From positions 124,001-188,000 of the IMG/VR virus record IMGVR_UViG_3300042868_005134: 64,000 nucleotides of DNA. One strand, 5' to 3'. Under the pieces are notes generated by a model that searched no databases, had not been told where the DNA came from, and saw only the letters and a list, made by a program, of their open reading frames with translations. A program made the position numbers and the translations under genes. The number at the start of each line of letters is the position of its first letter. The stretch's first letter is position 1. Below, in pieces: positions 1-23,200 of the stretch.

Positions 1-321
1 ATTAATAGGTTGGTATTCTATTTTATTTTGTACAACTTTTTTCCTGTTATACTGATTTAGTGTTTCAGTTTGTATAGTAAACTTAGGAAGATCACATTTC
101 TTTACCAGCATATTGATTTCGTTTCTATGCTGATAGGTAAAGTTTAAACTTTTTAATGCGTTGGTATTGATGTTAAACACCACATGAAATAAAAACTTTT
201 GCTTAGGAGCAAGTCTTAAATCACTGTCTACATGGAGCCGTGAAGCATGTTGAAAATCTCCCACATTTCCGCGGGGATTAGTTGCACCACTTACAAATTG
301 ATTCCAGGCTTTGCTTGTCAT
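1..321 (-). CDS. Tail tube-like / baseplate tail-tube initiator protein (partial, runs off window edge; missing from ORF track)
   Basis: Hand translation from ATG at 321 gives MTSKAWNQFVSGATNPRGNVGDFQHASRLHVDSDLRLAPKQKFLFHVVFNIN...EINMLVKKCDLPKFTIQTETLNQYNRKKVVQNKIEYQPIN, open to position 1. The 'VKxxDLPKFxxxTETxNQYNRK' pattern resembles tube-fold proteins, and it lies directly downstream of the tube gene. Confidence 0.65.
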   Translation of the reverse strand, partial: MTSKAWNQFVSGATNPRGNVGDFQHASRLHVDSDLRLAPKQKFLFHVVFNINTNALKSLNFTYQHRNEINMLVKKCDLPKFTIQTETLNQYNRKKVVQNKIEYQPIN

Positions 322-326
322 GTAAT

Positions 327-333
327 TATTTAT
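327..333 (-). promoter_or_regulatory. T4-type late promoter (ATAAATA)
   Basis: ATAAATA on the minus strand, 5 nt before the ATG at 321. Confidence 0.7.
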
Positions 334-369
334 CGACTACAGAAAACTACGTAGTTAATGAAAAGTCGT

Positions 370-395
370 AAAAAAAGGCTGCTGCCAGCCTTTTT
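370..395 (-). terminator. Rho-independent terminator after tail tube gene
   Basis: GGCTG-GCAG-CAGCC stem-loop (377-390) followed by T7 on the minus strand, just after the stop at 403. Confidence 0.8.
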
Positions 396-402
396 ATTTT
401 GA

Positions 403-1041
403 TTAAGTTCGGCCTGGGCCGGTAATCATTGACGATGCTGCTACACTTCGGCCAAGGCCTGTAGTGATACCAACACCTGCGCCGCCACCTACCTGACTTG
501 CGTTATCATACTTGATGGTCATGGTGATAGTAACTGCTTCGTTAGCACTGTAAGCTAAGTTGTTATAGTTAACGTTTTCTAGATAGCAACCGTATAGTTC
601 CCATGTTTCTAACACTGTCGGAGCATTGTTGCCGTTGCCGCCGTCTAAGATTTCGTATTTGGTTGTAAACTTATAGTCGATACCAGCTGCTGCAGAACTC
701 ATTTCTAAGAAGTCGAATTGTTTCTGTAGTTGCTCGCCTACTAGTTTGCTTACGCTACCGTCTACAGAATCGCGAACGTTTAAAGCCACTGCTGTCCAGC
801 TGTGTCTGCCTGCTAGATAGACTCTGCTGTTGTAAGTAGGGACTTCAATTGCTTCGAATGCCACTGTTGGTCTTGCGATATCGATAACTTGTTTAGTTAG
901 TTCAGTTGCTTGTCCTCCTGTAACGCCAAAACCAATCAAAGTAACTCTAAAGCGATACTTTAACTTTGGCATCAACAAGCCCTGTGAACCAGCTCCACTT
1001 TCTAGTGGAACTGTAAAGTTGTTTAATGATGAAATTGCCAT
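403..1041 (-). CDS. gp19: Tail tube protein (gp19-like)
   Basis: 212 aa with 'PKLKYRFRV', 'VYLAGRHSW', 'ETWELYGC' tube-like motifs; immediately downstream of the sheath gene. Confidence 0.85.
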   Translation of the reverse strand: MAISSLNNFTVPLESGAGSQGLLMPKLKYRFRVTLIGFGVTGGQATELTKQVIDIARPTVAFEAIEVPTYNSRVYLAGRHSWTAVALNVRDSVDGSVSKLVGEQLQKQFDFLEMSSAAAGIDYKFTTKYEILDGGNGNNAPTVLETWELYGCYLENVNYNNLAYSANEAVTITMTIKYDNASQVGGGAGVGITTGLGRSVAASSMITGPGRT

Positions 1042-1069
1042 TTTGTATGTTTCCTTTTATAATTTAGGA

Positions 1070-4000
1070 TTAACCTAACGCAGCGATTTCACCAGTATTC
1101 TTCAAGCGTAGTGGAATAAAGATAAATTCCACAGCCTTGACTGGTTCAATAGCAATGTCTAAGTATAATTCATTTCTATCAATTCTTGCTGGCGTATTGT
1201 TACTTTCGTCGCATACAACAATGTAGTCATACAACGCACGTTGTCCTACAAGTTCTAGCATTAAACTTTCTGCTGCAGATTTGATCTGATCTCTAGTGAT
1301 TTTATCATTAGGTTCAAAGATATATGGTTTAGCCAAAGCACTTAGTTGTCTACGTAAGTAAATTACCAAGCGAGCTACGTTGATACGATCCAATGCACTT
1401 GCTGCCTTGGCGCGGGTCTTTTGTCCGTAGTTAACCAAGCCGGTTCCTGTTAGGAATGTGATTGGATTAATCTTAGCTTCGTACAATGTATCACGTTGTC
1501 CGTTGTTTAGAGCAACACTGTCAAATTCACCTTCGCTAGTAACATAACCAACTGCAGTTGCGTTAGTAATACCACCACGTCGCACACCTGCTGGAGCAAA
1601 CCAAGGATAAGCCACTTGGTCATTCAACGCAATAGTACGTAAAATCATGTGACTTGGAGGAACAACAACATTGTTACCAAAGTTATCGCTTGTGAAGCCC
1701 CATGGATAGAACATACCCATGTATTCGTCGTAGCTGACGCCGCCTAGGTCGTTGTCTTCTAGTGCCAAACGTTGATTTGTACCCCATGCTAGCAAACTGG
1801 TTGCGTCAGGTGTTAAACGAGCCGGAGTATCACCTACCACAAATGCTGTCAAGCCTCTGTCGTAGTTTAATGTGACCAATTCGCCAATTAGTTCTGGATA
1901 ACCAGGGCAAGCTAACAAGTTAAACACACGACTTTCTTCATCGCGAATTTCTTGATTGCTGTTCACTGTTGCTTGAATAGCACGTACAACAACTTTACGC
2001 TGTGCCTTACGGCCAAATGTACCAGATCCGTCGTCTTGATTGCTGCTCACTGTTACCCAACGATGTGGATAGTAAAGAGCCATGCTGGCGTCGTTCATAC
2101 GAACATTATCAGCATCAACATCGATATAATTTTGTCTAAATTCTTTTACGTTAAAACCACTTCTACGTGTGTTCCATAGCAACATACCTTTTGGATATAG
2201 TGCTGGATCTGGAGCATCAAAGTCTAAGAAATCGCTCGATAACAATTCTTCGATAGTTGCTGGTTCGTCACTGGTTGCGCCTGCTGTGTTGTAGCGAGCA
2301 TCAGCAAACAACATACCGTCTTCAGTACTTTGGTCTGACTTGTCTACCAAGAACCACTTTAATAAATCTTTATTAAATCGATACACTGTTCCCCAGTTTT
2401 CAGTATCGCTGCTGTCAACCCATAAGTCGCCAGTCTCTAACGGTGAACCGTCAATCTGTGTTTCTGGCTTGGTAGCACTTACAAGCGGTCCAGTTGGGTC
2501 TGTTAGTGGTAATTCATTTAGGTATCCCACCCAATCGTTTCCGTCGTGAATCATAATATCCACTTCGTCAACAACACTGCTATACCATAATGTACCGTTT
2601 GCTGTTAAACTTGTTGGAGGATTACTGTTGGCAGAATAAGTCAATGGTTCCCATAAGCTGGCAACATGATCATGATCCCCATCAGGATCTAAATATAAAT
2701 TAAGAGTACCATTACCTGTGCTTGGCACATATTCTGCAAATCCAAGTGCTGCCAATGGGCCGTTTGTACCATCTAACAAGTGAATATCACCGCCTTCTTC
2801 GTGAACAATTTGTAATCTATTCTGACTGTCAACACTGGCTTCAATAGGAGAACCTGATGGTAATAGTGTATTAATAGCAGTGGCCACAGTTGCGGCATTA
2901 GCCACAGCAGGTGTTGCGATAGTAAAACTGATAGTAGCATCATTAGTTAGTGCGGCTGATCCTTGTTCTGTGTAAGCAATGTCAAAAGTATAACTTGTGC
3001 TTTCTCCGCTTACAACAAATGTTAAGTCATTAGCTGGAGTGGCGCCGCCAAGGGCAGTACCTAAAATCTTCAGCGTATTACCTGATTGATAGCCTGTGCC
3101 GCCAGTTGTTATTGCAACTGTTGTATTTGTACTAGAGTATGTGGTTAATACACCCGTTTTAGTAACAGTGGCTATTGCGCTTGCGCCTGTGCCTGTAACC
3201 GTGGCAACTGCTACTGCTGTGTATGTAGCGGCAGCGGACACACTAGTTCCAGCAAGGGTAGTTACCGCAGTTAATACTCCAGCATCGCCAGCAAATGTGC
3301 TTGCTGTCACTTTGCTAGATTTAATAGCTGTAGGAGCAGCACTTTTTCTACGATAGATAGCAAAGTCTGCTTGTTGCGGACTTGTTTCAGTGGTGTTATA
3401 TTTTACATACAATTGACCAGCTGCTAAGTTTGCGCCGCCGCCTGATTTATCTAGCTTGTACAAAGCTGTTGTTGGGTCCGAATACAATGGAGCATCAATT
3501 TGTTCAAATAGTTGTGTTGTGCTATTGTAACGTTTTGCTCTCCAACGTGCGCCTAAATTAGGTTCTGTTGTTTTAATCCACACACTTCCTGTAGGAGCAT
3601 TTAAATCTCCAGTCTTCCATTGAGGAACGCTGGTGTGAGGCGCCATTGATAATAACACTGTGTTAGTCCAGCTATCGTCCCATGCTGTTGTCCCAACTTG
3701 TACCCATGTACCACTGCTATTTCTATACCATACAGTCATTGGGTGAATTGTGGTTAAATCTGGTTCTGTAACATCGTCGCCTACTGCTACAACAGCATAA
3801 CTGCCATTCTTGCCAACACTGCTAACAGGGCCGCCTGTTAAAGCATTTACTTTGGTTGGATCTGTAATTACTAAAGGTATTTTGTTAGTGAATGTTTGGC
3901 CGCCTGTTACAGTGGCAGCATCTCCGTTCCACTCAAAGATACCCCAATTGGTGTTGTCAACATCTAACCAATAGGTTCCATTATTAGGTTCTGCTGCAGG

Positions 4001-5485: not shown

Positions 5486-5495
5486 TAGTGATTGA

Positions 5496-10402: not shown

Positions 10403-11008
10403 TTAAGCATATGTTGCATTTAATGTAAACCATAATGTTGAACTAAGTGCAATATATTCTAATCCTGAACTTGCCGCTAAAGTAACACCAGTATTTGTTC
10501 CAGCATTATTAAGTTGGCCTCCATATGATGGATATACTATTATGTCAACTGCTAGATTATTTCGAACAACAATACGTTCGCCGCCCACGGCTAAAGGTAA
10601 TAGTATTCCAGAGCCGGCGCCGCCTGCAGTGACCAAGTTTATTTGACGTGTTAGTAGTGTAGCGCCGGCTTGTGTTGTTCCAGCTGAAGTTACTGCTACA
10701 TTATTACCAAACGCAACAGATCCTGAGTATTGTGCTAGACGAATCAAACCAGTGTCTAATACTTCAATGCTGGGTATGCCCGACACGTCATTTACACTGA
10801 AAATAGTGCCGCTTAAACTATTGGTAATACTGAATAGTTGGCCCGCACTCCCTTCAAAGCTCAATGTGCCGTTGCTGGTGGCATAGGCTTTTAATGTAAT
10901 ATTTTGAGCTGCCAAGCTGGCGTCGGCGCCGCTGAACACTATCTGTGGATCAGCCGTGGAAGAGCTAATGTTTGGGGTTATTACAATATTTTTATCTGAA
11001 TGTGCCAT
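10403..11008 (-). CDS. Tail fibre-associated structural protein
   Basis: 201 aa; 'LSFEGSAGQLFSITNSLSGTIFSVNDVSGIPSIEV' is a fibre-type module; late promoter upstream. Confidence 0.55.
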   Translation of the reverse strand: MAHSDKNIVITPNISSSTADPQIVFSGADASLAAQNITLKAYATSNGTLSFEGSAGQLFSITNSLSGTIFSVNDVSGIPSIEVLDTGLIRLAQYSGSVAFGNNVAVTSAGTTQAGATLLTRQINLVTAGGAGSGILLPLAVGGERIVVRNNLAVDIIVYPSYGGQLNNAGTNTGVTLAASSGLEYIALSSTLWFTLNATYA

Positions 11009-11023
11009 GTGTTATCTCTCTTG

Positions 11024-11030
11024 TATTTAT
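11024..11030 (-). promoter_or_regulatory. Late promoter (ATAAATA) overlapping upstream stop codon
   Basis: AATAAATA spans the TAA of the 11030-12247 gene. Confidence 0.6.
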
Positions 11031-12247
11031 TAGATTCCGTAACGACTGCGGAGTGCGTTAAAATTCTGCTGTACTTCCGCGGCTGATAATGCTCGGTTGT
11101 ATATTTTTGTTGATCCTATATTTCCAGAAAATGCAAAACTACTCAAATCACTTCTAATTCTACCTTGATCTATACTACTTACTCCAGTTCCACTAACTTG
11201 ATAAGTTCCTGCGATTATAGGAGGAGTTCCTAAGTCAACACCATTTTTATATACTTTCCAGGCAGTACCGGTTGATGCAGAAACAACAATGTTGACCCAA
11301 GTGTTTATGGATAATATATTATTATGTTGTATATAATTCCCTGGAGCTAAAGATATTTCCAAATTGGATGCTGATTTTATAAGCATTTCATATTTTTCAG
11401 TTACATTAGAACCCAATAATGCTGCATATGTTTTTGTACTATTAACATTAAACCATATATCTACACTAATAGAATTTTCGACAATACCACTAGAAGATAT
11501 AGATAGGAAATTATTACTACCATTGAAACTAAACGTACCATTACTAGCATACGTTAAACTATTTGCCGTGATTGTACTATTATTTGTAAGATCAAGTATT
11601 GCTTGTGTATTTGATCTGCTAGTGTCTGTATATGGTGTAGGAAATGTACCAAACTCTACCTGAGCACCACCTACTAGGATAAACCCTGCAAAAGAACCAT
11701 CGGTAATCCCGTAGCGTGCCGGATAGGCAATAATAAAGTTTACGTTTCCTGAAGCTGTTCCTTGTAGTCCCTGACGTTGCCATGAACCTTTTTGCGACAT
11801 ATCATATTCTGTTACATATCCTCCAGATAGTGCAGCAACAGACGCTCCTTCAATTGAAGAAAACATTCCATTAATATTACAATTAACGCTCAAGAAGGTA
11901 TATGCAGACATTGCATAACTTTGACCGGCGGTCATCGGTGCTGTTTTAAGTATATAAGCATAAGAGTTGCCAGACCACGATGCTGATAAGGCTCCAGACG
12001 TATACTTGCGAACTTGTCCTAAGTAAGTGCCTGCTGGTCCAGGTACTCCTGGATCAGTATATGTACTGCTAATTGTCCAACTAATACCATTCCAAAAATG
12101 CAGAGTTTGTGTTGGCCAAGTATAATATCCATCTAACGGGTGTAAATTTGTAGTTGGTGCGCCTCGCCAAGACTTCTGCGTATTGGACATGTCTGTGTAT
12201 AACACTAGACCATTAGTGACTACTGAGGGAGAATGATTAAGACTCAT
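11030..12247 (-). CDS. LamG / concanavalin-A-like domain virion protein with inserted passenger domain
   Basis: N-terminal 'GLVLYTD' and C-terminal 'KIYNRALSAAEVQQNFNA.RSRYG' LamG signature; paralogue of 18284-19510. Confidence 0.8.
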   Translation of the reverse strand: MSLNHSPSVVTNGLVLYTDMSNTQKSWRGAPTTNLHPLDGYYTWPTQTLHFWNGISWTISSTYTDPGVPGPAGTYLGQVRKYTSGALSASWSGNSYAYILKTAPMTAGQSYAMSAYTFLSVNCNINGMFSSIEGASVAALSGGYVTEYDMSQKGSWQRQGLQGTASGNVNFIIAYPARYGITDGSFAGFILVGGAQVEFGTFPTPYTDTSRSNTQAILDLTNNSTITANSLTYASNGTFSFNGSNNFLSISSSGIVENSISVDIWFNVNSTKTYAALLGSNVTEKYEMLIKSASNLEISLAPGNYIQHNNILSINTWVNIVVSASTGTAWKVYKNGVDLGTPPIIAGTYQVSGTGVSSIDQGRIRSDLSSFAFSGNIGSTKIYNRALSAAEVQQNFNALRSRYGI

Positions 12248-12984
12248 AGTCCAAACCTACCACGTATCGCGTTAAAATTTTTTTGAATTTCTTGAGTCGA
12301 TAACTCTCTGTTGTATATTCTAATAACTGATCGTCTTCCATAATGCTTCCACCCATATAGCGCACCAAATTGGATGCCGCCACCGTCATATACTGCTTTG
12401 CCAGCAGTATTAGGAGTTGATCCTACACCTTGATACACTCCGTTGATGTATAATGAAACAGTATTACTCATTCTGTTCCATATCATAGTTCTAAGTTTCC
12501 AGTAGTTAAGGTTGCTATAAGGTGCGTTTAATGATATTGTAGGTTGGTCGCTGTACCCACTTGCTGGATTGTTTGATTGTCCAAATACAAACTGAGTGTT
12601 TCCTACTCCGTGATTCCAGTCAAAACCCACACTGCCTGCGCTGTACGCTTGACCCGATGCCACTGTGCCAGCATCCGCTTCTGGATAGTTTACAGAATAT
12701 GTGTATACTGATTCTTCAATAGTCCATGCACCGTTGGTAGATGTTAATACACTACTTAAACTTGTTGAGTCAGCCACAGACACTATAAAAAAATTACTAA
12801 CGTTGCCACTATTTTGTAAATAGCCTGCGCTGACAAATTCACCACTGCTGATTGTTCCGTGATTGCCGTTTCCACTTATGTCATACCAGGTAGATCCTGT
12901 TCCAGGATAACTCTTAACATTGGCAGCATCGTAGTGAAGAACTAAGCCTGTTAACGTGGTAGAAGTATTATAATTTACGCTCAT
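12244..12984 (-). CDS. LamG / concanavalin-A-like domain protein
   Basis: 'GLVLHYDAANVKSYPGTGSTWYDISGNGNHG' and 'RIYNRELSTQEIQKNFNA'. Confidence 0.8.
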   Translation of the reverse strand: MSVNYNTSTTLTGLVLHYDAANVKSYPGTGSTWYDISGNGNHGTISSGEFVSAGYLQNSGNVSNFFIVSVADSTSLSSVLTSTNGAWTIEESVYTYSVNYPEADAGTVASGQAYSAGSVGFDWNHGVGNTQFVFGQSNNPASGYSDQPTISLNAPYSNLNYWKLRTMIWNRMSNTVSLYINGVYQGVGSTPNTAGKAVYDGGGIQFGALYGWKHYGRRSVIRIYNRELSTQEIQKNFNAIRGRFGL

Positions 12985-12998
12985 AATCTATAGTTTGT

Positions 12999-15900
12999 TT
13001 ACACGTATCCCAGGCCATTCCACGACCTACAGCTTACTCTAACATCTTTGAATATTCCAAATGTAGGATCGGTATTATATAAACTACAATCAACATATAC
13101 AGTATTATTTGTTCCATAGCTAGCCTGGTATAATAATTTAGATCCGTTGTAGTGTCTTATAAATCCATCAGTGTCATATACTATATAGAATTTCTGATTT
13201 TCATCCCATGTTGTGCCATGCGCGATTCCGGCGCCATTATTATATGTGTGGTAGTTATTCATGGTATACGGATAAGCACTATGATCAATAGAACTATAAT
13301 TAGCATCAGCTGTTGGATCTGTATTCCAACCTATCATGGCATATGATGCACCATTGTCGCCACCACCAGCAGCGGCTCGTTTACTAAACTCTATGGTACA
13401 AGGAGCACTGAATGCCTGTGTACTGTACGCTTGGCCGTTCCAACTATTGTTGTCTGCGTTTTTGGTAAAAGTCACAGTGTCGGTGCCATTATTCGACAAG
13501 GACATATTGGCGCTAAATGAATATGTAATAGTTTGATAACCAAGAAAACGTTCTTTAACGGCATTAAAGTTTTGCTGTACTTCTGCTGCTGTCAGTGCTC
13601 GACTATACAGAGAAGTGTGCGCCACTGAGCCGTTTAACCAATAATTATCGTTTAATGTTCCAATAGTGAACGGTAAAGTGGCGGCAACACCGATACCGCC
13701 TGTGTTAGAGTGTACAGCAACTCCGTTCTTATAAATTACACGAGAGCCGTCTGAGTTCAAAACAAGTCCTAAGTTGACCCAAGTATTCACAGTCACTGCA
13801 TTTCCAATATTGCCGCCAGTTGCGGCACCTGCATAATAATAAATTCCTCCACCATTTTCTATTCCAATATATGTATAGGCATTACTCTCTTGAGTACCCA
13901 TTAACTGATAACCGCTTGAGTGTGATAACGAATTAAATTTCACCCAGACAAAGAAACTTCTAGCTCCTGCGTCTACTTTGTGTGTAAATGTAATTTTGTC
14001 ATTGACACCATCAAACACAATACTTTTAATATTTTCAGTTGTATTATTGGCTCCATTGGTCAATATGCCGTGATTGTTATTACCACTTATATCAGTCCAC
14101 TGTGGGCCATCATTAAAATTTGAGTTTGGTGTAAATGTTCCACCACTTAAAAATGTATGTACAGTACTAAGTGTTCTAGTTTCTGTACCAACGGAGTAGG
14201 AAATTGTTGTTACGATGCCACCAGTGGCCCGCTGCACGCCTGGATAACGAACAATAACTACACCACTGCCGCCATCTTTAGCATGTGGTAAAGAATTATT
14301 TCCTGATCCACCACCACCTCCTCCACCAGTATTAGCAACTCCTGCAGTGGTACCATTGGCACTGCCAGTACCGTCAGCACCCCTGCCGCCGCCGCCAAAA
14401 TATCCAGTTGCTGACCCAATACTGTTAGTTACAGTAAAAGGCCCGTTGGTATAGACGCCACCGCCGCCACCACCGGCAAACCAACCTGGTGGAGATCCAC
14501 CTACACTGGCAAATTGTGGATAATATCGTCCGATGCCGCCGTTACTTGCAGTTGACGGACCGCCCCCAGTTGCTGTTCCGCCTGCGCCACCCCCGCCTGA
14601 ACCTTCGTGTGGAGCTGAATGATTGAAATCTTCAGCGATAGTTGGTCCGCCTGGCCCTCTGCTGCCGCCAGGAAAACCGTAGCCAGTGCCGCCACCGCTG
14701 TTTGTTTGTGTGGCTAGGCCGCCGCGAGACGCACCTGGATTTGAAACTCCAAAATAGTAGTCGCCCGCGCCGCCGCCGCTGCCGCCATTTTTATACACGC
14801 TGTCCGTGTAGAAGCTTTCATTGCCACCACCACCGCCTTGTGCTATAATATCGCTGAATGAGCTACTGCCACCTTGAAATCCGTGAGAATTATTTGTCGT
14901 GCCGTAGTTGCCTGTAGTTGACCCACCATAATACCTACCGCCCTGGCCTCCAGCACCCACAGTTACACTTATTCCAACTCCATTCTGAACATATTTATTA
15001 GGATGATATACCAAACCTCCGCCGCCGCCACCACCTGCAGCGCCATGACTACCACCTCCACCTCCACCTCCACCCACTACTAGCACTTCCACACCTGGAT
15101 TATTACCAAATGTAAAATAATCACTAGCAGTAAATGTGTGAATAGTATCATTGCCCGAAGTGGTTATTATTCCACCGGTGGCTTGTGGTGCTCCACGATA
15201 GCGAATAATAACTACGCCCGACCCACCAGCGCCGCCAGACTTTGAAGGGGAATAAGAGCCACCGCCGCCTCCGCCGCCAGTATTAGCAAGCCCTGCTGCG
15301 CCATCAGCACTAAAAAATGCTCCGCCGCCTCCACCCAATCCACCTATACCTTGTCTAGTTGGAGATGATGGAGAGTATGTTCCGCCAGCGCCGCCGCCGC
15401 CATAGTATGTTTGCGTTCCAACTGTGAATGTACCGCTTGTTGTGAACGTATGTACAGTGTCACCGTTAACTGAAGTTATAGTGCCTCCTGTTGCTCTTGC
15501 AACACCAGGATAACGAATAATAACTATACCACTACCGCCTTCACCACCCTTGTTATTACTATTATAATGAGATCCACCACCTCCGCCACCGCCGGTGGAT
15601 GCGCCTGCATTGCCGCCTGGTTGATTTGCGCCAGCAATGCCATCGATTGCTGGATTTATTCCTGTTGTGTCTCCAAAACCGCCGGGCCCTTCATAACTTG
15701 ATCCGCCACCACCGCCACCTGCGCCGCCATGCCCTCCTAAACCTGAACTTGGTGGATGTGTTGCTCCACCACCTCCTCCACCAAAATAAAATGGACTTAT
15801 CTGTGGATATTGACGGCCGTTGCCGCCGGTGGGTCGATTTGGTCCGCTTGCTCCGCGTTGACTGGCACCACCTCCACCTCCTGAATAATGGCTGTTGTCG

Positions 15901-17873
15901 CCGGACGCAGGATTTCCAGAATTTCCTCCAGAAAATCCTTGACCGGGTGTTCCATTGTCGACAATTCGACTACCACCGTGAGTATAACCTGAACATCCAC
16001 CGCCCGAAGCGCCAGTACCACCTATGCCACTGTTTGGAAGATATCCATAATATGAACTAGCGCCAAATCCACCGCCAATGGCAGTTATTCCAAAAATACT
16101 ACTGGTGCCGCCGTTGGTTGCTGAAATTGTAAATTGATGACCTCCTGGTTGTGGGCCTGCGCCGTCAGTTCTATAAGTACCGCCACCTGCTGGTGCGCCA
16201 TATCCGCCTGCGCCCACAGTCACTGTATAAGCAGTTCCGGGAATAACACTGATGCTGGGATTATAGAGCACTCCTCCGCCGCCGCCACCACCACCCATGT
16301 CCATTCCACCACCACCACCGCCTCCAACTACCAATGTGCTCACTGTGGTCAGTGTTCCACTAATACTAGTCGCTAGTCCAATTCCACCATTGCCACCACC
16401 ATCGGTGGCACCTGCCGATCCTGCGCCTCCAGCGCCACCGCCACCACCAGAATGATAGTATCCTGATTCTATTGCGGCTCCACCGGCATATCCTTGTCCA
16501 GGTGTGCCTGGCGCTACAGATTGTCCTTCACCTGTGCCGCCGCCTGATCCACCATTTGTTGGCCGGCCGCTGGTTGCTGTTCCGTCATATGTATTAGTAT
16601 TATTGCCGCCAGCACCTCCGGCGATGGCTGTGATACTAACAATTCCTGATCCTCCAATAGAAGAATTTCCAGCATTACTAGTATTGTCACCGTTTGAAGT
16701 GCGGCCGCTGCCGCCTTGTCCCACAGCTATATAATATGTTCTATCACGAAACATATTGTATGCACTATTATAAACTACGCCACCGCCACCACCACCTCCA
16801 CCCATTTCAAAACCGCCACCTCCACCACCTGCTACTACCAGTGCTTCTACTGTGGTAGGTCCAGATGATTTTATGTTGTTAGCGTCTAGAGACAATACTA
16901 AGTTACTGTTGCTGATAACAGTCCCGTTGGTAACAGTGGCAATTCCTTGACTGGTTAAAAAACGAACAATAACTATGCCGCTGCCGCCTTCGCCGCCTTT
17001 ATTTGTTACGTTGTAATGAGATCCACCACCTCCGCCACCGCCGGTATTTGCGCCAGCATTTCCGCCGGACGTTCCGTTTGCTGCGGGCACCGCAGAATTG
17101 GATCCATTATTGTATCCGGTGCCGCCGAGTCCTGCGATTCCGCTGTATGCAGTGCCGCCGCCGCCGCCGCCAAGTCCACCGTTGCTACCATCACCTAACG
17201 AATAGTTAGAGCCTCCACCACCACCAGCCCAATAATAGCCTGTTCCTAAAATACTGTTATAAACTCCGACACCCCCATTTGCCCTATTTGGCCCGTCGGC
17301 ACCTGCACCACCTGCACCACCGCCACCGCCTGAATAATAACTGCCGCCGCCGCCATTGCCGCCTTTATTTCCTTGACCAGCAGTTCCAGATGGCCCTATA
17401 GTAGTTGCTCCTGCTGTGTATCCTGAATTGCCGCCTCCTGATCCTCCTGCTCCACCTATGCCATAGTTTGGAAGATATCCATAATAGGAACTGCCGCCAT
17501 AGCCACCGCCAATGGCAGTCAATGATCCAAACACCGAATTGCCGCCGTTGGTTGCTGAAATTGTAAATTGATGACCTCCTGGTTGTGGGCCTGCGCCGTC
17601 AGTTCTATAAGTACCGCCACCTGCTGGTGCGCCATATCCGCCTGCGCCCACAGTCGCTACGTAAGTTGTGCCGCTTGTTACGGTAAAACTTGAATTACTA
17701 ATGACTCCGCCACCTCCGCCGCCACCACCCATGTCCATTCCACCACCACCGCCTCCAGCAACCACTAGGACTTCAACAGTTCCACTAAATTGAGGGATAA
17801 ATGTGCCCGATGTTTTAAACACCCAAACAGTGTTGCTGGTTCCAACCCGGTTAGTTCCTGAAAATGAAGCCAT
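12999..17873 (-). CDS. Glycine-rich repeat / LamG fibre or adhesin protein (1624 aa)
   Basis: Four 'V(E/S)xLVVxGGGGGG...GGSG(I/V)V(I/V)(V/I)R' modules plus a split LamG domain ending 'LYSRALTAAEVQQNFNA'. Confidence 0.8.
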   Translation of the reverse strand: MASFSGTNRVGTSNTVWVFKTSGTFIPQFSGTVEVLVVAGGGGGGMDMGGGGGGGGVISNSSFTVTSGTTYVATVGAGGYGAPAGGGTYRTDGAGPQPGGHQFTISATNGGNSVFGSLTAIGGGYGGSSYYGYLPNYGIGGAGGSGGGNSGYTAGATTIGPSGTAGQGNKGGNGGGGSYYSGGGGGAGGAGADGPNRANGGVGVYNSILGTGYYWAGGGGGSNYSLGDGSNGGLGGGGGGTAYSGIAGLGGTGYNNGSNSAVPAANGTSGGNAGANTGGGGGGGSHYNVTNKGGEGGSGIVIVRFLTSQGIATVTNGTVISNSNLVLSLDANNIKSSGPTTVEALVVAGGGGGGFEMGGGGGGGGVVYNSAYNMFRDRTYYIAVGQGGSGRTSNGDNTSNAGNSSIGGSGIVSITAIAGGAGGNNTNTYDGTATSGRPTNGGSGGGTGEGQSVAPGTPGQGYAGGAAIESGYYHSGGGGGAGGAGSAGATDGGGNGGIGLATSISGTLTTVSTLVVGGGGGGGMDMGGGGGGGGVLYNPSISVIPGTAYTVTVGAGGYGAPAGGGTYRTDGAGPQPGGHQFTISATNGGTSSIFGITAIGGGFGASSYYGYLPNSGIGGTGASGGGCSGYTHGGSRIVDNGTPGQGFSGGNSGNPASGDNSHYSGGGGGASQRGASGPNRPTGGNGRQYPQISPFYFGGGGGGATHPPSSGLGGHGGAGGGGGGSSYEGPGGFGDTTGINPAIDGIAGANQPGGNAGASTGGGGGGGSHYNSNNKGGEGGSGIVIIRYPGVARATGGTITSVNGDTVHTFTTSGTFTVGTQTYYGGGGAGGTYSPSSPTRQGIGGLGGGGGAFFSADGAAGLANTGGGGGGGSYSPSKSGGAGGSGVVIIRYRGAPQATGGIITTSGNDTIHTFTASDYFTFGNNPGVEVLVVGGGGGGGGSHGAAGGGGGGGLVYHPNKYVQNGVGISVTVGAGGQGGRYYGGSTTGNYGTTNNSHGFQGGSSSFSDIIAQGGGGGNESFYTDSVYKNGGSGGGAGDYYFGVSNPGASRGGLATQTNSGGGTGYGFPGGSRGPGGPTIAEDFNHSAPHEGSGGGGAGGTATGGGPSTASNGGIGRYYPQFASVGGSPPGWFAGGGGGGVYTNGPFTVTNSIGSATGYFGGGGRGADGTGSANGTTAGVANTGGGGGGGSGNNSLPHAKDGGSGVVIVRYPGVQRATGGIVTTISYSVGTETRTLSTVHTFLSGGTFTPNSNFNDGPQWTDISGNNNHGILTNGANNTTENIKSIVFDGVNDKITFTHKVDAGARSFFVWVKFNSLSHSSGYQLMGTQESNAYTYIGIENGGGIYYYAGAATGGNIGNAVTVNTWVNLGLVLNSDGSRVIYKNGVAVHSNTGGIGVAATLPFTIGTLNDNYWLNGSVAHTSLYSRALTAAEVQQNFNAVKERFLGYQTITYSFSANMSLSNNGTDTVTFTKNADNNSWNGQAYSTQAFSAPCTIEFSKRAAAGGGDNGASYAMIGWNTDPTADANYSSIDHSAYPYTMNNYHTYNNGAGIAHGTTWDENQKFYIVYDTDGFIRHYNGSKLLYQASYGTNNTVYVDCSLYNTDPTFGIFKDVRVSCRSWNGLGYV
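16106..16221. repeat. 116-bp exact direct repeat, copy 2 (copy 1 at 17540-17655)
   Basis: Base-by-base comparison shows identity over 116 bp at an offset of 1434 bp. Confidence 0.9.
17540..17655. repeat. 116-bp exact direct repeat, copy 1
   Basis: Identical to 16106-16221; encodes TVGAGGYGAPAGGGTYRTDGAGPQPGGHQFTISATNGG. Confidence 0.9.
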
Positions 17874-18205
17874 TATGATATGTCCGGTAATACAGAAGGT
17901 ATTTCATTCCAAGATTTTGTTTTTTCATGCCATATGTAATGTTTGTTATCTTGTGGCATATCAACAGGAGCTGTCCAAACTGTGCCAACTAGAGTCCAAC
18001 TATCAAACGGTCTTGGGGCAATAAATGCAGCTAAATCTACATTGTAAGTATATCCAATACCTACATGATGATGGGCCACACCGTTGTTATCCAGAACTTG
18101 TATAAAGTTTACTGGATCGCCTAAGGCTCCCGATTCGATAAATTCTTGTTCAGCAACAATGATATTTACTACTTGATTGTTTTCTATTTTTGCGTAATGT
18201 GCCAT
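17873..18205 (-). CDS. Small Trp-rich protein preceding the glycine-rich fibre (possible fibre assembly factor)
   Basis: The ATG at 18205 (MAHYAKIENNQVVNIIVA) has SD GGAG at 18218-18215; TAATG coupling to the 1624-aa gene. Confidence 0.65.
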   Translation of the reverse strand: MAHYAKIENNQVVNIIVAEQEFIESGALGDPVNFIQVLDNNGVAHHHVGIGYTYNVDLAAFIAPRPFDSWTLVGTVWTAPVDMPQDNKHYIWHEKTKSWNEIPSVLPDIS

Positions 18206-18247
18206 TATTCTATACTCCATTTGTTTAAAGGGCATGTTCTAAACTTA

Positions 18248-18254
18248 TATTTAA
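18248..18254 (-). promoter_or_regulatory. Possible late promoter (TTAAATA)
   Basis: TAAATA core in the 48-bp intergenic gap; AT-rich context lowers confidence. Confidence 0.4.
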
Positions 18255-18283
18255 TCATATAATGATCCTACTATATGCTACAC

Positions 18284-19510
18284 TCATAATCCGTACTTTC
18301 CTTTTACTGCGTTAAAATTCTGTTTGACTTCTGCGGCTGATAATGGACTGTTATATATTTTAACTGAGGGGACCTGTCCAATAAACCAGCGTTCCCCGGA
18401 ATCTTGAAAACCTCTTCCAATATTGACATTATTAAAATTTCCAGGCCAGGTATACGAAGCAGCAGCACTCTGTACAACTGATCCATTGTAAAATGATGTA
18501 AAGGTATTTCCATTTTTTGTTAGGCAGGCACAGTGATATACCGACGAATTTAGTCCAGACGACACAACAGTCCAAAATTCGTAGTTACCTGACAGGTCTC
18601 CAGTAATCCAAACTAAATTTCCTGAACTATTTTGTTCTAATCTAGGTCCGACATTACTGTATGATCCAGGGTATCTAAGCCAATTACAATCTATAGGATT
18701 CCTATAATTAGCTACACTATCAGATTTAAACCATATCTCTACAGTAAAATTTGATATACCTGTAATTGCGTTAACTGAAGCGTAGTTACTACCGTTGAAA
18801 CTAAACGTACTATTACTAGCATAAGTCAAACTCGCGGCTGTAATTGTACTATTATTTGTTAAATCTAATAGGGCTTGCGTGGTAGATCGTGTGTTATTCG
18901 TGTACGGTGAAACAAATGTTGAGTCGTTGCGATCTTCTTTAAATGGTGCAGCCCAATATACGGTAATTGGCACATTGAGAGTAGCGCCTGCTGGATTTAT
19001 TGCCCAATATTTTCCATCGCTGCCGCCGCCTGCACTGTAGAATATAACATGTGCTCTGTACCAACCGTCGCCCATGTCATCGTAGTTTCCTGTACTTTGC
19101 CAGCCGCCGATATTGGAATAGTGTGTGTAAATAGGAGTTGATGAATTTAATCCGGATCTGCCCACAGCTGGTTTAAAAAATATACTATGTCCTGTGTATC
19201 TTGCTGCTGCACCGCCGCCTGCTCCTGTTACAACACCAATACCTGGATTGCCAGCATTGGTCAAATAGCTGACTCCAGTGGCTGTAACAGGAGTGAGTAC
19301 TTGTTTATAAACAGGTTGGCCTCTATACGATTCTGTTGTCACAGTTAAAGATGAAGTTACATCCGATGGTGTATTTAAATAGGTGCCTATGCCTATGCCA
19401 GCAGAAATATTTGTAGTGGGCGCACCTTGGAAAGACTTCTGAGTATTTGACATATCATAGTAAAATACCAATCCATCTGTGACTACTTTAGGTGAATGAA
19501 ATAATGACAT
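18284..19510 (-). CDS. LamG domain virion protein with inserted passenger domain
   Basis: Paralogue of 11030-12247, sharing 'MSL.HSP.VVT.GLV.Y.DMSNTQKS..GAPTTN' and 'RS.TQA.LDLTNNSTITA.SLTYASN.TFSFNGSN'. Confidence 0.8.
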   Translation of the reverse strand: MSLFHSPKVVTDGLVFYYDMSNTQKSFQGAPTTNISAGIGIGTYLNTPSDVTSSLTVTTESYRGQPVYKQVLTPVTATGVSYLTNAGNPGIGVVTGAGGGAAARYTGHSIFFKPAVGRSGLNSSTPIYTHYSNIGGWQSTGNYDDMGDGWYRAHVIFYSAGGGSDGKYWAINPAGATLNVPITVYWAAPFKEDRNDSTFVSPYTNNTRSTTQALLDLTNNSTITAASLTYASNSTFSFNGSNYASVNAITGISNFTVEIWFKSDSVANYRNPIDCNWLRYPGSYSNVGPRLEQNSSGNLVWITGDLSGNYEFWTVVSSGLNSSVYHCACLTKNGNTFTSFYNGSVVQSAAASYTWPGNFNNVNIGRGFQDSGERWFIGQVPSVKIYNSPLSAAEVKQNFNAVKGKYGL

Positions 19511-20214
19511 TATGTTCCGTATCGTTTTCTATGTGATGTTTGGTATTGTTGAATAACTTGTGAAGCTGAGTGTGCGGCGTTGTAAACCTGCATGGCTCCA
19601 AAATCTCCTAGCCAATGTCCCCAGCCCCAAAAAATTCCAATACTGCCCATGTTGCCGCCACCAAGTGAACGAGGCGAAACTACATTCAATACATAATCTT
19701 GTACACCATTTATGTACATGACCATATTGGTACCACTGGTTCTAACAAACGCAAGATGTACCCAGGCGCCTGTATTGGCCGATGCTCCAGTGCTGGTATA
19801 ATAATTCCATTGACTGTCGTACTGAACGTAATATAGTTTTCCGTCATTTAATCCGTAACCTACATTAACAGGGCCGCCGCTCCAGTGTGAAAATAATGCT
19901 CGCTGACCAGTGGCTGTTGTGCGTACAGAAAAATATACAGTGCAGACAGTTGGTAATGTAAAATCGGTGTGAGCAATATAGTCATTCGATCCGTCAAATG
20001 ATAGATATTTGATATTGTTAACATTGTCGAATGTGGGGCCGTTAAGCAGCGTTCCTACCCTAGTACCTTGCAAATCATTTAGTGTGGTTCCTGAGTATGA
20101 CAGTGTTCTGTTGAGATCTACTGCAAAATCTAAATTTGCAGATATGAGACCGGCTCGTGAATTTTCCTTTGACGAATTTATCAAAGAGTCAGCAACTCCG
20201 TAGGTGGTTGACAT
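19510..20214 (-). CDS. LamG domain protein
   Basis: 'SFDGSNDYI', 'WVHLAFVR', 'MQVYNAAHSASQVIQQY'. Confidence 0.75.
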   Translation of the reverse strand: MSTTYGVADSLINSSKENSRAGLISANLDFAVDLNRTLSYSGTTLNDLQGTRVGTLLNGPTFDNVNNIKYLSFDGSNDYIAHTDFTLPTVCTVYFSVRTTATGQRALFSHWSGGPVNVGYGLNDGKLYYVQYDSQWNYYTSTGASANTGAWVHLAFVRTSGTNMVMYINGVQDYVLNVVSPRSLGGGNMGSIGIFWGWGHWLGDFGAMQVYNAAHSASQVIQQYQTSHRKRYGT

Positions 20215-23200
20215 TACTCAATCTCCACCACAAGTTTTTCAACGTCGACTCGCTCCCCATATACTGTGTAGAAACAATCAATCTTAGATGGAAACAACCC
20301 ACTATTTTCAACATGAACAACATTGTCTTTAATACATAGAACATACAAATTTTGATGTTTACCAATTGGTGTTAAGTTTACTGTGATGGAGTCAGGATCT
20401 ACAAGTTTGGTCCAGTATTCTGGAAGTTCAATCGTATTACCTTTTAATCTACCTCTTACATAAACACCGTTTTCAGGTCCTTCTAAACTACCATATCGTA
20501 ATTTCATTCCAGCTCTAGTTGGGTGATCAATTACAAAAGATTTAGTAGTTGCTGCGAATGAACCAACGACTTGAAGTGTGTACACTGGAGCACTAGTACC
20601 GACACCAACATTGCCGCCATCTCTGTTCAATAATAAACTTGCTGGAGATGAATTGCTATCATTGTTATATGCTCCGATAACACTACCATTGGTTGTGCTT
20701 CCACCTATCCTTAGTTGCTTTCCGCCACTAGTTCCAAACTGACAATGCCATACGTCCGCAGCAGTATTGACGCTAAGTTTATATCCTGGACTTGATGTGC
20801 CTACTCCAAAATATCCACTAGTATTAAATACGCCTACTTGTAAAGCATTAACCATGAATGATAATGGATAACTATTATATGTTCCAACGAATCCACCAGG
20901 TGTTACGCCACTAACAGCTTGCCATGCATCATGAGCATACATACCCATACTAACAGTGCCGGTCTTTACATGTATTCTAGCATTGCCGCTGCCGTGAACA
21001 TTCAATTGTCTGTCCCACCCATTGTAATTAGTAGGCGATTCACCAATAGATAATCCACCAAAGGTTTCGCCGATCATGTAACTATTGTGATAAGCAGTAA
21101 ATGTCCCGGCACTATTAACCTCAAAGCGAACTGTGTTGTTTGTTGCAAATTGTAATGCTCTGGCCGAATCTGTTCCCAAAACAGTTGCGTAGTTATAAGA
21201 TCCTGAAAATGTTGAGGCAACTGAACCTTGATTACCAAATATGGTGTTTCCAGCAGTGTTTTTTATAACAAACAAAGCGGCGTTTGCACCTGTTGTTGAC
21301 TCCATTCTCGTTAACACCGAGGCATTTTGAATGTCTAACGAATATCCATTAGCAACTGTGGTGGTGCCAATGCCAACTCCGCCAGTTGAGGTCGAAGTAC
21401 CAACTAGCACCATGGTAGGAACATCGCCCACATAACTTGCGCCCACTGTATAAAAATGCAACTCTCCCCTATTCCAATTAGGGTCGGTGCCGCTAGCGCC
21501 ACCGATGCCCGTCTTTTTGCCCATAATGGCAGCATACATCGAGTTGTAACTACCGGAGTTAGAAAGAGCTGAGAATGTTATTGCTGGAGAATAAGAATTA
21601 GTTGTATTATTTTCATTATGAAGTGTAAGACCAATACTTTGGCCTCTAGTAGTTCCAGAGCTGCTTCTTGTGATGGCTATAACTGCATCTTTACCATCCG
21701 CAGCCCAATTAGTGCCATTAGATGTTAATAGTCGATTATTTCTTGAAGTATAGTGAGTTGAATCTGAATCCACGTTAGTAAAACTAAAAAACTCATCGTT
21801 GGGCGCAAGGAATCTGCCTCCGCCATTGAAGCTTGACATTGTAGTTGTAGTTGAGCCTCGGCCAGTTACTGTGGCCAGAGTATCGGCTTCAGCAGTTAGT
21901 GGAGTAATGTTTCCTTCATGCCACACTCTATGAGCAACTGCGCCCATGCTCCAACCACCAACTTTTAAGTCAGTACCATCTAATCCTAGTTTTATAGCAT
22001 ATGATCCAGGTCTATGGAAAGTCATGTAAGCAGGGTTAGTACTGCCAGTTCCATATATTTCCAATCCTGGAGTACCTTGAGAACCATCAGCAAATGTTCC
22101 AGAACTGCCCCTTGTAATAAACCCGCGGTTTGTCACGGTGGCCAGTGTATCGGCTTCTGCTGTAAGATACGTGCTAGTGTCTGCACTAAGTACGCCGCCA
22201 ACGCCAAGTTTAACGAATCCAGATGTTCCAAGGTCTGGAAGTTTGACAGAGCCGTTTGCTGTTAGACCACCTGAGAAAGTTGATAGAGTACTGGTAGTGG
22301 CGCCTCGGCTAGTAACAGTTGACAGTGTATCAGCTTCAGCAAATGATGTTAAAATAGTAGCACCGTTAATAGTAGCACTTGAAGCACTGGTAAGTTCAGG
22401 TACGCTATCTGGAGTAAAGGCAGCAATATTGGTGCCAGCGCCAGGGCTGCTAATGATAAACATTGTGTCCATTGGCGGTGGATTTGTCCCTGTTTGATTC
22501 CAATTGGTTGTTAGCCGAACATCGCACTGTGCGTAAGCGGTAGTTTCGACGTAGATGGGTATCCATCGTTGATCACCTGTGCCTGTCACTGATGCGCCCA
22601 CAGTTACTCTAAAATTGTTTGGGCCAATGCCTATATATTCAACTAGTCTAAGTGTTGATGTTGGACCGCTGCCATAAGATACAGTGTATTTTTTCTTAAG
22701 ACCAGAACCGTAATATTTTTCCAACAATTCAATTTCAATAACACCAATGCTATTCCAGTCGTTGAAATCCACAGCAACTCTTGCTATTTCAAATTGTTTT
22801 GCCTGGTTACCGCTTTGTGGTATTGCCCAATAAAACGTTTTAACTGCCGACACAGGACCTTGATATGCTGTAGAATCGTATCCATCTAACAGTTCAGAGT
22901 CTGCAGCTTTTGCAGTTTTACCTAGATATCTTAAATCTAGATCTACAGATGCTAACCCAGTTACGTGTCCATAAGTATCAAGTGTTACATCTTGAATTAC
23001 TGTTCCGTTAGAATTATCAACACTTGCTTGACTGCTAGTATCGGCATGATTAACTGTGACCGCACCTGTGGCACCAGATATCGTGATTGCATTACCTGCA
23101 ACTAAACTAGTAACACCTGTATTGGTAATTACCGGAGTTGATCCTTCACCTGTGGCTGTTCCCACGGTAATGCCAGTGCCTGCTGTCATTGAAGCAACAT

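What the first reader, a model, noticed from the sequence alone, without database searches (positions are those of the whole stretch)
14110..16860. Nested architecture: a glycine-rich module inside another, inside a split LamG domain
Seen: module 2 stops at GGIGLATSISGT (codon ending 16353) and its natural continuation QTYYGGGGAGG resumes at 15413. Module 1 has the equivalent uninterrupted run GGVGVYNSILGTGYYWAGGGGG. The intervening 939 bp (15414-16352, 313 codons, in frame) is a complete module 3 with TGGAAC at both junctions. Modules 2-4 in turn separate LVLSLDANNIKSS (16903-16862) from WTDISGNNNHG (14099 downward). Inference: successive in-frame microhomology-mediated insertions built a branched or telescoping adhesin, and precise excision variants may coexist in the population.
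Basis: partly seen in the sequence, partly recalled or inferred. Interest (0 to 1): 0.6.

Follow-up and report, generated by a model that had tools for sequence, protein, structure and literature searches.

The report
Nested glycine-rich domains in phage fibre protein
One 1624-residue structural protein of a 383-kb T4-like jumbo phage is built like a Russian doll (a glycine-rich receptor-binding module sits inside another, and both sit inside a loop of a lectin-like LamG domain); the layout is real, old and conserved, not a variable insertion.

Summary
The gene at window 12999-17873 (minus strand, 1624 aa) has four Gly_rich_2 (PF21722) modules. Module 2 is split after T507 and resumes at Q821. 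The 313 codons between (15414-16352) are a complete module 3. A profile of modules 1, 3 and 4 matches the two halves at complementary positions (13-197 and 198-320). An intact module-2 homologue in another phage (L017) joins them directly (ISGT|PTWY). The halves are predicted to assemble (ipSAE 0.91, best control 0.00). Module 3 alone folds confidently (pLDDT 93) like the Pam3 and Bxb1 tail-fibre tips.

The LamG split is also real, but it is not special to this gene. More than 100 proteins of about 530 aa, and the syntenic orthologues, carry one such module in the same LamG loop. Only this lineage holds three.

In-frame domain insertion is well supported. The TGGAAC microhomology is weak evidence. 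No excision variant appears in any assembly, and four strains at dS about 0.4-0.6 keep the layout under purifying selection (dN/dS about 0.15). Reads could not be tested.

This is a new variant of a known kind, nested domain insertion, of moderate interest.

The parts
12999..17873 (-). Whole gene, 1624 aa (P0001), a multi-domain virion fibre or adhesin-like protein
   Evidence: Single open frame. PF21722 scores 137 bits against a cut-off of 24.3. An identical gene occurs in another sample (L005).
16902..17822 (-). Module 1 (residues 18-324): an intact glycine-rich (TNF-like plus polyglycine) domain with its first strand at the N-terminal side
   Evidence: Own HMM positions 1-311, E 2e-128.
16863..16901 (-). 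LamG strand 1 (residues 325-337, LVLSLDANNIKSS), separated from the rest of the LamG domain
   Evidence: Unique match to the first strand of the unsplit paralogue. pLDDT about 80 in the AF2 model. Matches to LamG structures start at model residues 1-4.
16353..16862 (-). Module 2, N-terminal part (residues 338-507), the host domain
   Evidence: HMM positions 13-197. 76% identical to L017 residues 64-224.
15414..16352 (-). Module 3 (residues 508-820): a complete glycine-rich cassette, from the VSTLVV strand to the HTFTTSGTFTV tail, inserted in module 2
   Evidence: HMM positions 9-327, E 2e-147. AF2 pLDDT 93.4, pTM 0.92. Fold matches to Bxb1 tail tip (Z 13.9) and Pam3 fibre (Z 12.3).
15096..15413 (-). 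Module 2, C-terminal part plus tail strand (residues 821-926)
   Evidence: HMM positions 198-320. 69% identical to L017 residues 226-301. Predicted to assemble with residues 338-507: ipSAE 0.91, best control 0.00.
14100..15095 (-). Module 4 plus tail (residues 927-1258): an intact cassette in tandem after module 2, still inside the LamG loop
   Evidence: HMM positions 1-327, E 3e-104.
13539..14099 (-). LamG body (residues 1259-1445), starting at WTDISGNNNHG
   Evidence: AF2 pLDDT 75-90. Fold matches at Z 15-17 to LamG-like jelly rolls. Pfam itself gives no Laminin_G_3 hit here.
13002..13538 (-). C-terminal domain (residues 1446-1624), conserved, fold not determined here; SPRY-like is only a lead
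   Evidence: Shared with P0002-P0009 and with the L006 572-aa protein. Atlas lead.
16354..16359 (-). TGGAAC at the upstream junction (codons of S505-G506-T507)
   Evidence: Reads TGGGAC in strain L011.
15415..15420 (-). TGGAAC at the downstream junction (codons of V818-G819-T820)
12244..12984 (-). Neighbouring paralogue with an unsplit LamG (LVLHYDAANVKSYPGTGSTWYDISGNGNHG), used as comparator

Best explanation
The gene encodes a structural fibre or adhesin-type protein of a T4-like jumbo phage. Its domains are nested by in-frame domain insertion. The order is: module 1, LamG strand 1, then {module 2 N-part, [module 3], module 2 C-part, module 4}, then the LamG body, then the C-terminal domain.

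The unit that moves is a glycine-rich cassette. It starts at the VEVLVV-type strand and ends with an extra HTFTxSGTFT strand. Its two ends are therefore expected to lie side by side, so it can sit in a hairpin turn of a host domain (inferred).

One such cassette in the LamG loop between strands 1 and 2 is the ancestral, family-wide state (shown). In this lineage the loop came to hold two tandem cassettes, modules 2 and 4. A third cassette, module 3, of the same type as module 1, was inserted into a hairpin of module 2 between T507 and Q821 (shown).

The event predates the split of the known strains and is kept by purifying selection (shown).

Functionally, each module is expected to be a receptor-binding head like the Pam3 gp24 fibre tip. 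The protein would then be a branched, multivalent adhesin on a LamG hub (inferred).
For: Nesting of module 3 in module 2:
- The two halves of module 2 match complementary profile positions around a full module 3.
- An intact module-2 homologue in L017 matches the halves at 76% and 69% identity, and they abut at ISGT|PTWY. All other modules are 46-56% identical.
- Split-domain test of residues 338-507 with 821-926: ipSAE 0.91, best of 3 controls 0.00. That mark was reached by 58 of 80 solved complexes and 2 of 110 mismatched pairs; the counts hold only roughly because my own alignments were used. The three runs share at least 96% of contacts and the partner's pLDDT is at least 90. Strand ALVVAGG (344-350) pairs with GVVIIR (886-891), and the broken ends 491-507 and 821-833 touch.
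- Module 3 alone gives pLDDT 93.4 and pTM 0.92, with its tail strands confident.
- Its fold matches phage fibre tips: Bxb1 9d93_Qb (Z 13.9, rmsd 3.3, 175 aa), Pam3 7ypx_A (Z 12.3, rmsd 2.7, 168 aa), and ALK/LTK at Z about 5.

Split LamG:
- There is an unsplit paralogue next door.
- AF2 strand 1 has pLDDT about 80.
- LamG-like structures match at Z 15-17, rmsd 2.7-2.9, with 172-186 aligned residues spanning model 1..1124.
- The family-wide layout is shown.
- The syntenic orthologues carry one intact cassette.

Conservation and context:
- Strains P0024, P0025 and P0026 keep the layout.
- dS is 0.38-0.62 and dN/dS about 0.15 in every module part.
- GC3 is 0.31, like the neighbouring genes, so the GC rise comes from glycine codons.
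- Structural context: tail sheath, gp15 and gp23 lie in the window. The neighbours match 'virion structural protein' families.
Against: - No experimental structure or binding data exist for this protein.
- AF2 could not model module 2 or the core of module 4 within the whole chain (pLDDT about 25, thin alignment).
- The claim that the cassette ends are adjacent rests on contact lists and confidence values, not on coordinates.
- Pfam does not call Laminin_G_3 in this protein.
- The profile search of PDB sequences did not reach ALK or Pam3.
- The order of the events, and whether module 2 or module 4 was the first occupant of the loop, is unknown.
- A role in the virion is inferred only from gene context and homology.
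Confidence: 0.8

Rival explanations
1. The insert is a currently mobile or unstable segment. Precise excision between the TGGAAC copies yields a mixed population of long and short forms, a kind of phase or host-range variation.
For: A 6-bp direct repeat lies exactly at both junctions. Excision would be in frame and would restore a module like the intact one in L017.
Against: - No short form exists among the 11 cluster members, the strain variants or the fetched loci. Every sequence that covers a junction keeps it.
- The upstream repeat reads TGGGAC in strain L011, yet the layout is the same.
- dN/dS of module 3 is 0.15.
- Six bases 939 nt apart are a poor substrate for deletion, and the repeat is not clearly above chance.
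- Assemblies drop rare variants, and reads were not testable.
Confidence: 0.05
2. There was no insertion. A linear array of three modules lost the C-part of the first and the N-part of the third, so modules 2a and 2b come from different ancestral modules.
For: A linear tandem array is the common arrangement in relatives such as P0006 and P0254. Module 2b is slightly closer to the C-part of module 3 than to the other modules.
Against: - One intact module in L017 is the closest relative of both halves, at 76% and 69% identity against 46-56% for all other modules. The halves abut there without a gap.
- Two deletions with exactly complementary end points would be needed.
Confidence: 0.03
3. Two successive partial tandem duplications (N-part doubled, then C-part doubled) produced the 1-1-2-2 order. 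Divergence or gene conversion followed.
For: Tandem duplication is easy in repetitive glycine-codon DNA. The order N, N, C, C fits formally.
Against: Module 2a is only 47% identical to the N-part of module 3, while module 3 is 72-74% identical to module 1 and to module 1 of P0002. Module 3 also carries its own complete tail strand and start strand, that is, the same cassette boundaries as the units found in LamG loops.
Confidence: 0.05
4. Assembly artefact: repeats between modules caused a chimeric contig order.
For: Modules 1 and 3 share stretches of 81-83% nucleotide identity. Some assemblies break exactly there: P0020 and P0021 both start at the shared stretch.
Against: The same order occurs in independently assembled strains that differ by about 13% in nucleotides (L011, P0025, P0026). 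It also occurs in identical form in other samples (L005, L016), always as one open frame.
Confidence: 0.02

Closest known systems
Cyanophage Pam3 tail fibre gp24 (PDB 7YPX/7YFW) and the Bxb1 tail-tip protein (9D93 chain Qb): TNF-like plus glycine-rich domain
   Same: The module 3 model superposes at Z 12-14 over 168-175 residues with 30-33% identity. In Pam3 the glycine-rich loops form a lattice whose variable distal tips are proposed to bind the receptor (PMC9608196).
   Different: Pam3 gp24 has one such domain at the end of a trimeric helical shaft, and it needs a chaperone. Here four modules sit in one chain, one inside another and three inside a LamG loop, with an extra tail strand. Trimerisation and chaperone dependence were not tested.
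ALK/LTK extracellular TG (TNF-like/glycine-rich) domain, PF12810
   Same: The same general fold class: matches at Z about 5 over 115-125 residues. PF12810 is recorded on several relatives, such as P0009 and P0198.
   Different: The structural score is weak, and there is no sequence-profile link in PDB. ALK is a metazoan receptor, and no nesting is described for it.
The roughly 530-aa phage protein family carrying PF21722 and PF13385 (P0034-P0153)
   Same: The same building block: LamG strand 1, one glycine-rich cassette with a tail strand, then the LamG body. The modules are up to 72% identical to module 3.
   Different: These proteins have a single cassette. None of 120 has a split module. 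They lack the N-terminal extra module and the C-terminal domain.
Nested domain insertions in general (A1-B1-C-B2-A2), e.g. ndhH and cyanobacterial RNA polymerase (PMC13114784). From my own knowledge, not checked here: the split PH1(N)-PH2-PH1(C) of myosin X
   Same: A host domain is interrupted by an insert that is itself a host, and each domain still folds. According to that survey, insertions occur in about 20% of multidomain proteins.
   Different: In that survey inserts are consistently smaller than their hosts. Here the LamG host (about 200 aa) carries 921 aa, and module 2 (about 276 aa) carries 313 aa of its own family.
P0154, a 2111-aa glycine-rich protein from a bacterial metagenome bin (named Candidatus Ozemobacteraceae by its source)
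   Same: A second case of a glycine-rich module inside a glycine-rich module: outer part 1248-1459, inner module 1487-1749, outer part 1756-1845.
   Different: The host loop is different (profile position about 225, against about 197 here). The inner module is in the ordinary phase, with its first strand at the N-terminal side and no tail. It is therefore an independent event.

Membership tests
Gly_rich_2 (PF21722): TNF-like/glycine-rich fibre-tip domain | Pfam profile match above the curated cut-off | tested here: met
   137.2 bits against a cut-off of 24.3, in 7 stretches.
Gly_rich_2 (PF21722): TNF-like/glycine-rich fibre-tip domain | Fold: beta-sandwich from which glycine-run loops emerge, similar to solved fibre tips | tested here: met
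   Module 3 model has pLDDT 93.4. Matches: Bxb1 Z 13.9, Pam3 gp24 Z 12.3, ALK/LTK Z about 5.
Gly_rich_2 (PF21722): TNF-like/glycine-rich fibre-tip domain | Receptor binding by the distal loops, and a place at the tip of a virion fibre | not testable with these tools
   Only gene context and analogy to Pam3.
LamG / concanavalin A-like jelly roll (PF13385) | Pfam profile match | tested here: not met
   No Laminin_G_3 hit at E <= 0.1 for residues 1252-1624. Four neighbouring genes, and relatives such as P0003, do carry it.
LamG / concanavalin A-like jelly roll (PF13385) | Jelly-roll fold that includes the N-terminal edge strand | tested here: met
   Z 15-17, rmsd 2.7-2.9, 172-186 residues aligned, model range 1..1124. 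Strand 1 has pLDDT about 80.
Domain insertion (A1-B-A2), module 3 in module 2 | The host halves are colinear and complementary on one profile, and the insert is a complete domain | tested here: met
   Profile positions 13-197, 9-327 and 198-320.
Domain insertion (A1-B-A2), module 3 in module 2 | An uninterrupted homologue of the host exists | tested here: met
   L017 ORF 3740-6094: 76% and 69% identity to the halves, which abut at residues 224/225.
Domain insertion (A1-B-A2), module 3 in module 2 | The host halves fold together, and the insert folds alone | tested here: met
   Prediction only. ipSAE 0.91 against a best control of 0.00. Module 3 pTM 0.92.
Microhomology-mediated (illegitimate) recombination junction | A short direct repeat at both junctions, more than chance would give | tested here: inconclusive
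   The 6-bp repeat is present. However, 1.4% of comparable position pairs show 6 or more bases, the junction has some slack, and GGAAC codes the common dipeptide GT. GGAAC is also at the intact site in L017.
Variable or excisable cassette (population heterogeneity) | Forms with and without the insert coexist | tested here: not met
   Tested in assemblies only. All sequences that cover a junction keep it. Reads were not testable.

The most novel reading that the evidence does not exclude
The glycine-rich module with its tail strand is a general, insertion-ready cassette. Phages, and some bacteria, drop it into hairpin turns of lectin-like domains and of each other. Its own loops in turn accept other binding domains such as fibrinogen-C-like and jelly-roll domains. 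Recursive insertion, rather than end-to-end fusion, would then be a main route by which these giant phages build branched, multivalent receptor-binding heads and change host range.
Probability: 0.35. Interest if true: 0.6.

Novelty: new variant of a known kind. Interest (0 to 1): 0.42.

Why it matters
Phage host range is set by receptor-binding proteins, and their modular evolution is usually pictured as swapping of end-to-end modules. This gene shows a different building rule. A fibre-tip domain, known from Pam3 and Bxb1, is used as a cassette placed inside loops, up to three levels deep, and the layout is kept by selection.

Two practical points follow. First, domain annotation by linear profile hits misses the split LamG and the split module, so such proteins are mis-described in databases. 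Second, the cassette boundaries and the two permissive hairpins give concrete, natural insertion sites for engineering multivalent phage adhesins.

It is not a new principle of protein architecture. Nested insertions are well documented.

Tried and rejected
- Megablast of 9 kb against GenBank phages found no match.
- phmmer and a 68-sequence profile of the module against PDB sequences gave no significant hit. ALK and Pam3 were reached only by fold comparison.
- A free-gap pairwise alignment of the unsplit paralogue to P0001 gave a meaningless multi-gap path. I replaced it with an ungapped scan plus shuffles.
- AF2 of the whole insert-bearing region (residues 320-1450) left modules 2a and 4 unmodelled, because family rows align only to module 3. 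I therefore tested the two halves of module 2 as two chains, each with its own alignment.
- I did not send any joined sequence (module 2a plus 2b, or the hypothetical excision junction) to a search or fold tool. The halves were handled separately by reference. The only check for an excised form was a local 8-residue pattern match on sequences already fetched, which found none.
- Paper searches for PF21722 or Gly_rich_2, and for 'glycine-rich domain' with LamG and phage, returned nothing.
- P0254 came up as a nested candidate in the scan, but it is an ordinary tandem array.
- I considered foreign origin of the GC-rich stretch and rejected it: GC3 equals that of the neighbouring genes.
Full report
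**Observation**

The region lies in one open frame on the minus strand, window 12999-17873, 1624 aa (P0001).
- GGIGLATSISGT ends at 16353.
- QTYYGGGGAGG starts at 15413.
- The 939 bp between them are in frame.
- TGGAAC lies at 16354-16359 and at 15415-15420.
- LVLSLDANNIKSS lies at 16863-16901.
- WTDISGNNNHG lies at 14067-14099.

**Context**

The window is part of a 383,411-bp virus record that CheckV rates complete. It carries T4-type structural genes: a tail sheath at 1070-4375, a gp15-like gene at 8354-9955 and a gp23 major capsid gene at 40740-41924. The gene sits in a run of genes with LamG domains (10403-20214), whose products match PHROG 'virion structural protein' families. Its LamG part resembles S-PM2 p176, which is annotated as a virion structural protein. 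P0001 itself falls in phrog_2295, of unknown function. The GC rise to 0.52 is caused by glycine codons: glycine is 34% of residues, GC1 and GC2 are high, and GC3 is 0.31 as in the neighbours.

**The modules**

Pfam finds Gly_rich_2 (PF21722), 137 bits. I built an HMM from modules 1, 3 and 4 only. It hits module 1 at residues 18-324, module 2a at 339-504 (profile positions 13-197), module 3 at 504-820 (9-327), module 2b at 818-917 (198-320) and module 4 at 913-1251 (1-327). The two pieces of module 2 are therefore exactly complementary around a complete module 3.

**Is it a real insertion?**

Four lines of evidence agree.
- An IMG/VR contig (L017, ORF 3740-6094) has an uninterrupted module of the module-2 type. 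Module 2a aligns to its residues 64-224 at 76% identity, and module 2b to residues 226-301 at 69%. All other modules of P0001 reach only 46-56%. The join in L017 reads ISGT|PTWY, against ISGT|[module 3]|QTYY here.
- I folded residues 338-507 and 821-926 as two chains, each with its own 64-row alignment. They are placed together with ipSAE 0.91, against 0.00 for the best of 3 controls. That mark was reached by 58 of 80 solved complexes and 2 of 110 mismatched pairs, and the counts hold only roughly because my own alignments were used. The runs agree in at least 96% of contacts and the partner's pLDDT is at least 90. Strand ALVVAGG (344-350) pairs with GVVIIR (886-891). The tail TFTASDYFTF touches IAV (382-384). 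The two broken ends (491-507 and 821-833) touch. This supports one domain but does not prove it.
- Module 3 alone, with a 68-row alignment, gives pLDDT 93.4 and pTM 0.92, including its first residues and its tail strands. In that model the site equivalent to the insertion point is a short hairpin (RQY...FYF).
- The module 3 model matches the Bxb1 tail tip (Z 13.9, rmsd 3.3, 175 aa, 33% identity), the Pam3 fibre gp24 (Z 12.3, rmsd 2.7, 168 aa) and, weakly, ALK/LTK (Z about 5).

**The split LamG**

- The neighbouring gene at 12244-12984 has the unsplit form LVLHYDAANVKSYPGTGSTWYDISGNGNHG.
- Its first-strand segment has one outstanding match in P0001 residues 1-1258, at 321-335. It scores 31, the next best is 8, and 4 of 2000 shuffles reach 31.
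- AF2 of residues 320-1450 was poor overall (mean pLDDT 55). It was confident for strand 1 (about 80), module 3 and the LamG body (75-90).
- Structural alignment to LamG-like jelly rolls gave Z 17.2 for AbnA domain 4 (rmsd 2.7, 174 aa), Z 16.7 for the trans-sialidase lectin domain (rmsd 2.9, 181 aa) and Z 15.7 for the cyanopodophage Pan3 tailspike (rmsd 2.9, 186 aa). The model ranges run from residues 1-4 to about 1124. With only 172-186 residues aligned across that span, strand 1 is being counted as part of the sandwich across the 921-residue insert.

**The split LamG is the family norm**

A search with module 3 returned 675 proteins. The best 120 are about 500-545 aa and are mostly annotated PF21722 plus PF13385. 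They read: N-terminal L.L.LDA strand at about residue 14 (110 of 120), one module starting at the VEVLVV strand and ending ...HTFTSSGTFTP, then W.D.SGN and the LamG body. None has a split module.

The positional orthologues P0002, P0030 and P0032 (1043 aa) and P0003 (1009 aa) lie in the same gene neighbourhood, with a small ORF upstream and a 201-aa ORF, NUDIX, gp15 and gp13 downstream. Their layout is module 1, ILSLDAANIKS, one intact module, then VWTDL... and the LamG body. One cassette in the LamG loop is therefore ancestral. Three cassettes, one of them nested, are specific to the P0001 lineage.

All three cassettes here have the same phase: start strand through last strand, plus tail strand. 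This is also the phase of the family cassette. It suggests that module 3 came from a LamG-loop-type cassette. By sequence, module 3 groups with module 1, module 1 of P0002 and module 2 of P0003 (72-74% identity in the N-part). Modules 2 and 4 are divergent types.

**Age and selection**

Strains P0024, P0025 and P0026 (1624-1625 aa, about 90% identical) keep both junctions. Against L011 (P0024), dS is 0.38-0.62 and dN/dS is 0.15-0.17 in modules 1, 2a, 3, 2b and 4, and 0.08 in LamG. The architecture is old and functional.

**Microhomology and excision**

- The 6-bp repeat is real but weak evidence. The hexamer occurs 10 times in the gene. GGAAC encodes the frequent dipeptide GT. 1.4% of in-frame pairs 939 nt apart share 6 or more bases, and a few codons of slack raise that several-fold.
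- GGAAC is already present at the intact site in L017, which is what a microhomology junction would predict. It is also what chance would allow.
- In L011 the upstream copy reads TGGGAC.
- No sequence in hand shows an excised form.
Low-frequency excision is therefore untested, not excluded.

**Wider pattern**

Among 121 large proteins with these modules, P0154 has an independent module-in-module insertion at another loop and in the other phase. Eleven others have a module split near profile position 95 by inserts of 108-254 aa. Several of these proteins carry fibrinogen-C annotation, and in P0006 the insert is the same C-terminal domain that ends P0001.

The two in-window genes at 11030-12247 and 18284-19510 show the LamG first-strand motif at residues 13-27, followed by about 185 non-glycine residues before the LamG body. 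This suggests the same loop takes other inserts, but I did not model it.

**Mechanism (inference)**

In Pam3 gp24 the strands of the TNF-like sandwich extend into a glycine lattice whose variable distal tips are proposed to bind the receptor (PMC9608196). By analogy, P0001 would display four such heads. One is N-terminal and three hang from one hairpin of the LamG hub, one of them on the side of another. LamG and the C-terminal domain would be further lectin-like units.

**Comparison with known cases**

Nested insertions (A1-B1-C-B2-A2) are documented, and insertions occur in about 20% of multidomain proteins. In that survey, however, inserts are as a rule smaller than their hosts (PMC13114784). 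Here they are larger, and one is of the host's own family.

I found no paper describing the glycine-rich-module-in-LamG layout. Those searches cover open-access texts only.

**Verdict**

This is a new variant of a known kind, of moderate interest.

Noticed in passing
window 11030-12247 (-) and 18284-19510 (-): Both products begin with a LamG first-strand motif (GLVLYTDMSNTQKSW and GLVFYYDMSNTQKSF, residues 13-27). About 185 non-glycine residues follow before ...LDLTNNSTI... and the Pfam Laminin_G_3 hit (about 240-396). The same LamG loop seems to hold a different, unidentified insert.
   Followed up: partly
L006 9233-11701 (+), 823-aa product: A glycine-rich module is interrupted near profile position 95 by about 150 residues of a non-glycine domain. 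A LamG first strand (MILGLDAGNRKSW) follows, and then another roughly 170-residue insert before the LamG body.
   Followed up: partly
P0006 residues 392-869; also P0182, P0191, P0203, P0207, P0183, P0161, P0193, P0211, P0177, P0179: Modules are split near profile position 95 by inserts of 108-254 aa. In P0006 the insert is the same conserved domain that forms the C-terminus of P0001. Several of the others carry fibrinogen-C (PF00147) annotation.
   Followed up: partly
P0154 residues 1248-1845: A second, independent module-in-module case, in a protein that its source names as from a Candidatus Ozemobacteraceae bin. The host loop and the cassette phase both differ from those in the window gene.
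   Followed up: partly
P0002 versus P0003 (orthologues of the window gene): The two module types have swapped places. Module 1 of P0003 resembles module 2 of P0002 (75-89% identity), and module 2 of P0003 resembles module 1 of P0002 and of the window gene. This points to module shuffling between the N-terminal position and the LamG-loop position.
   Followed up: partly
window 17211-17822 versus 15414-16352: Modules 1 and 3 share stretches of 81-83% nucleotide identity (355 bp and 107 bp). Two truncated database members (P0020, P0021) start exactly at the shared stretch, so short-read assemblies tend to break there.
   Followed up: yes
window 15599-16060 (+) and 16134-16376 (+): Antisense open frames of 153 and 80 aa lie inside the gene. 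They most likely arise from the glycine-codon periodicity on the other strand. I did not examine them further.
   Followed up: no
window 20214-38292 (-): Three consecutive giant ORFs (1794, 2392 and 1802 aa) have no Pfam domain. The first matches PHROG families of unknown function and one 'virion structural protein' family.
   Followed up: no
G000:C1:46078-46824 (L002), outside the window: The same genome has a second PF21722 protein, in an open frame of 1147 aa.
   Followed up: no
window 13002-13538 (-), residues 1446-1624: The conserved C-terminal domain has only weak Pfam hints (Muc_B2, DUF2207). Its feature-based look-alikes include SPRY-domain clusters. It recurs at a chain end (P0001, P0002, the L006 572-aa protein) or inserted within glycine-rich modules (P0006-P0009).
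   Followed up: partly
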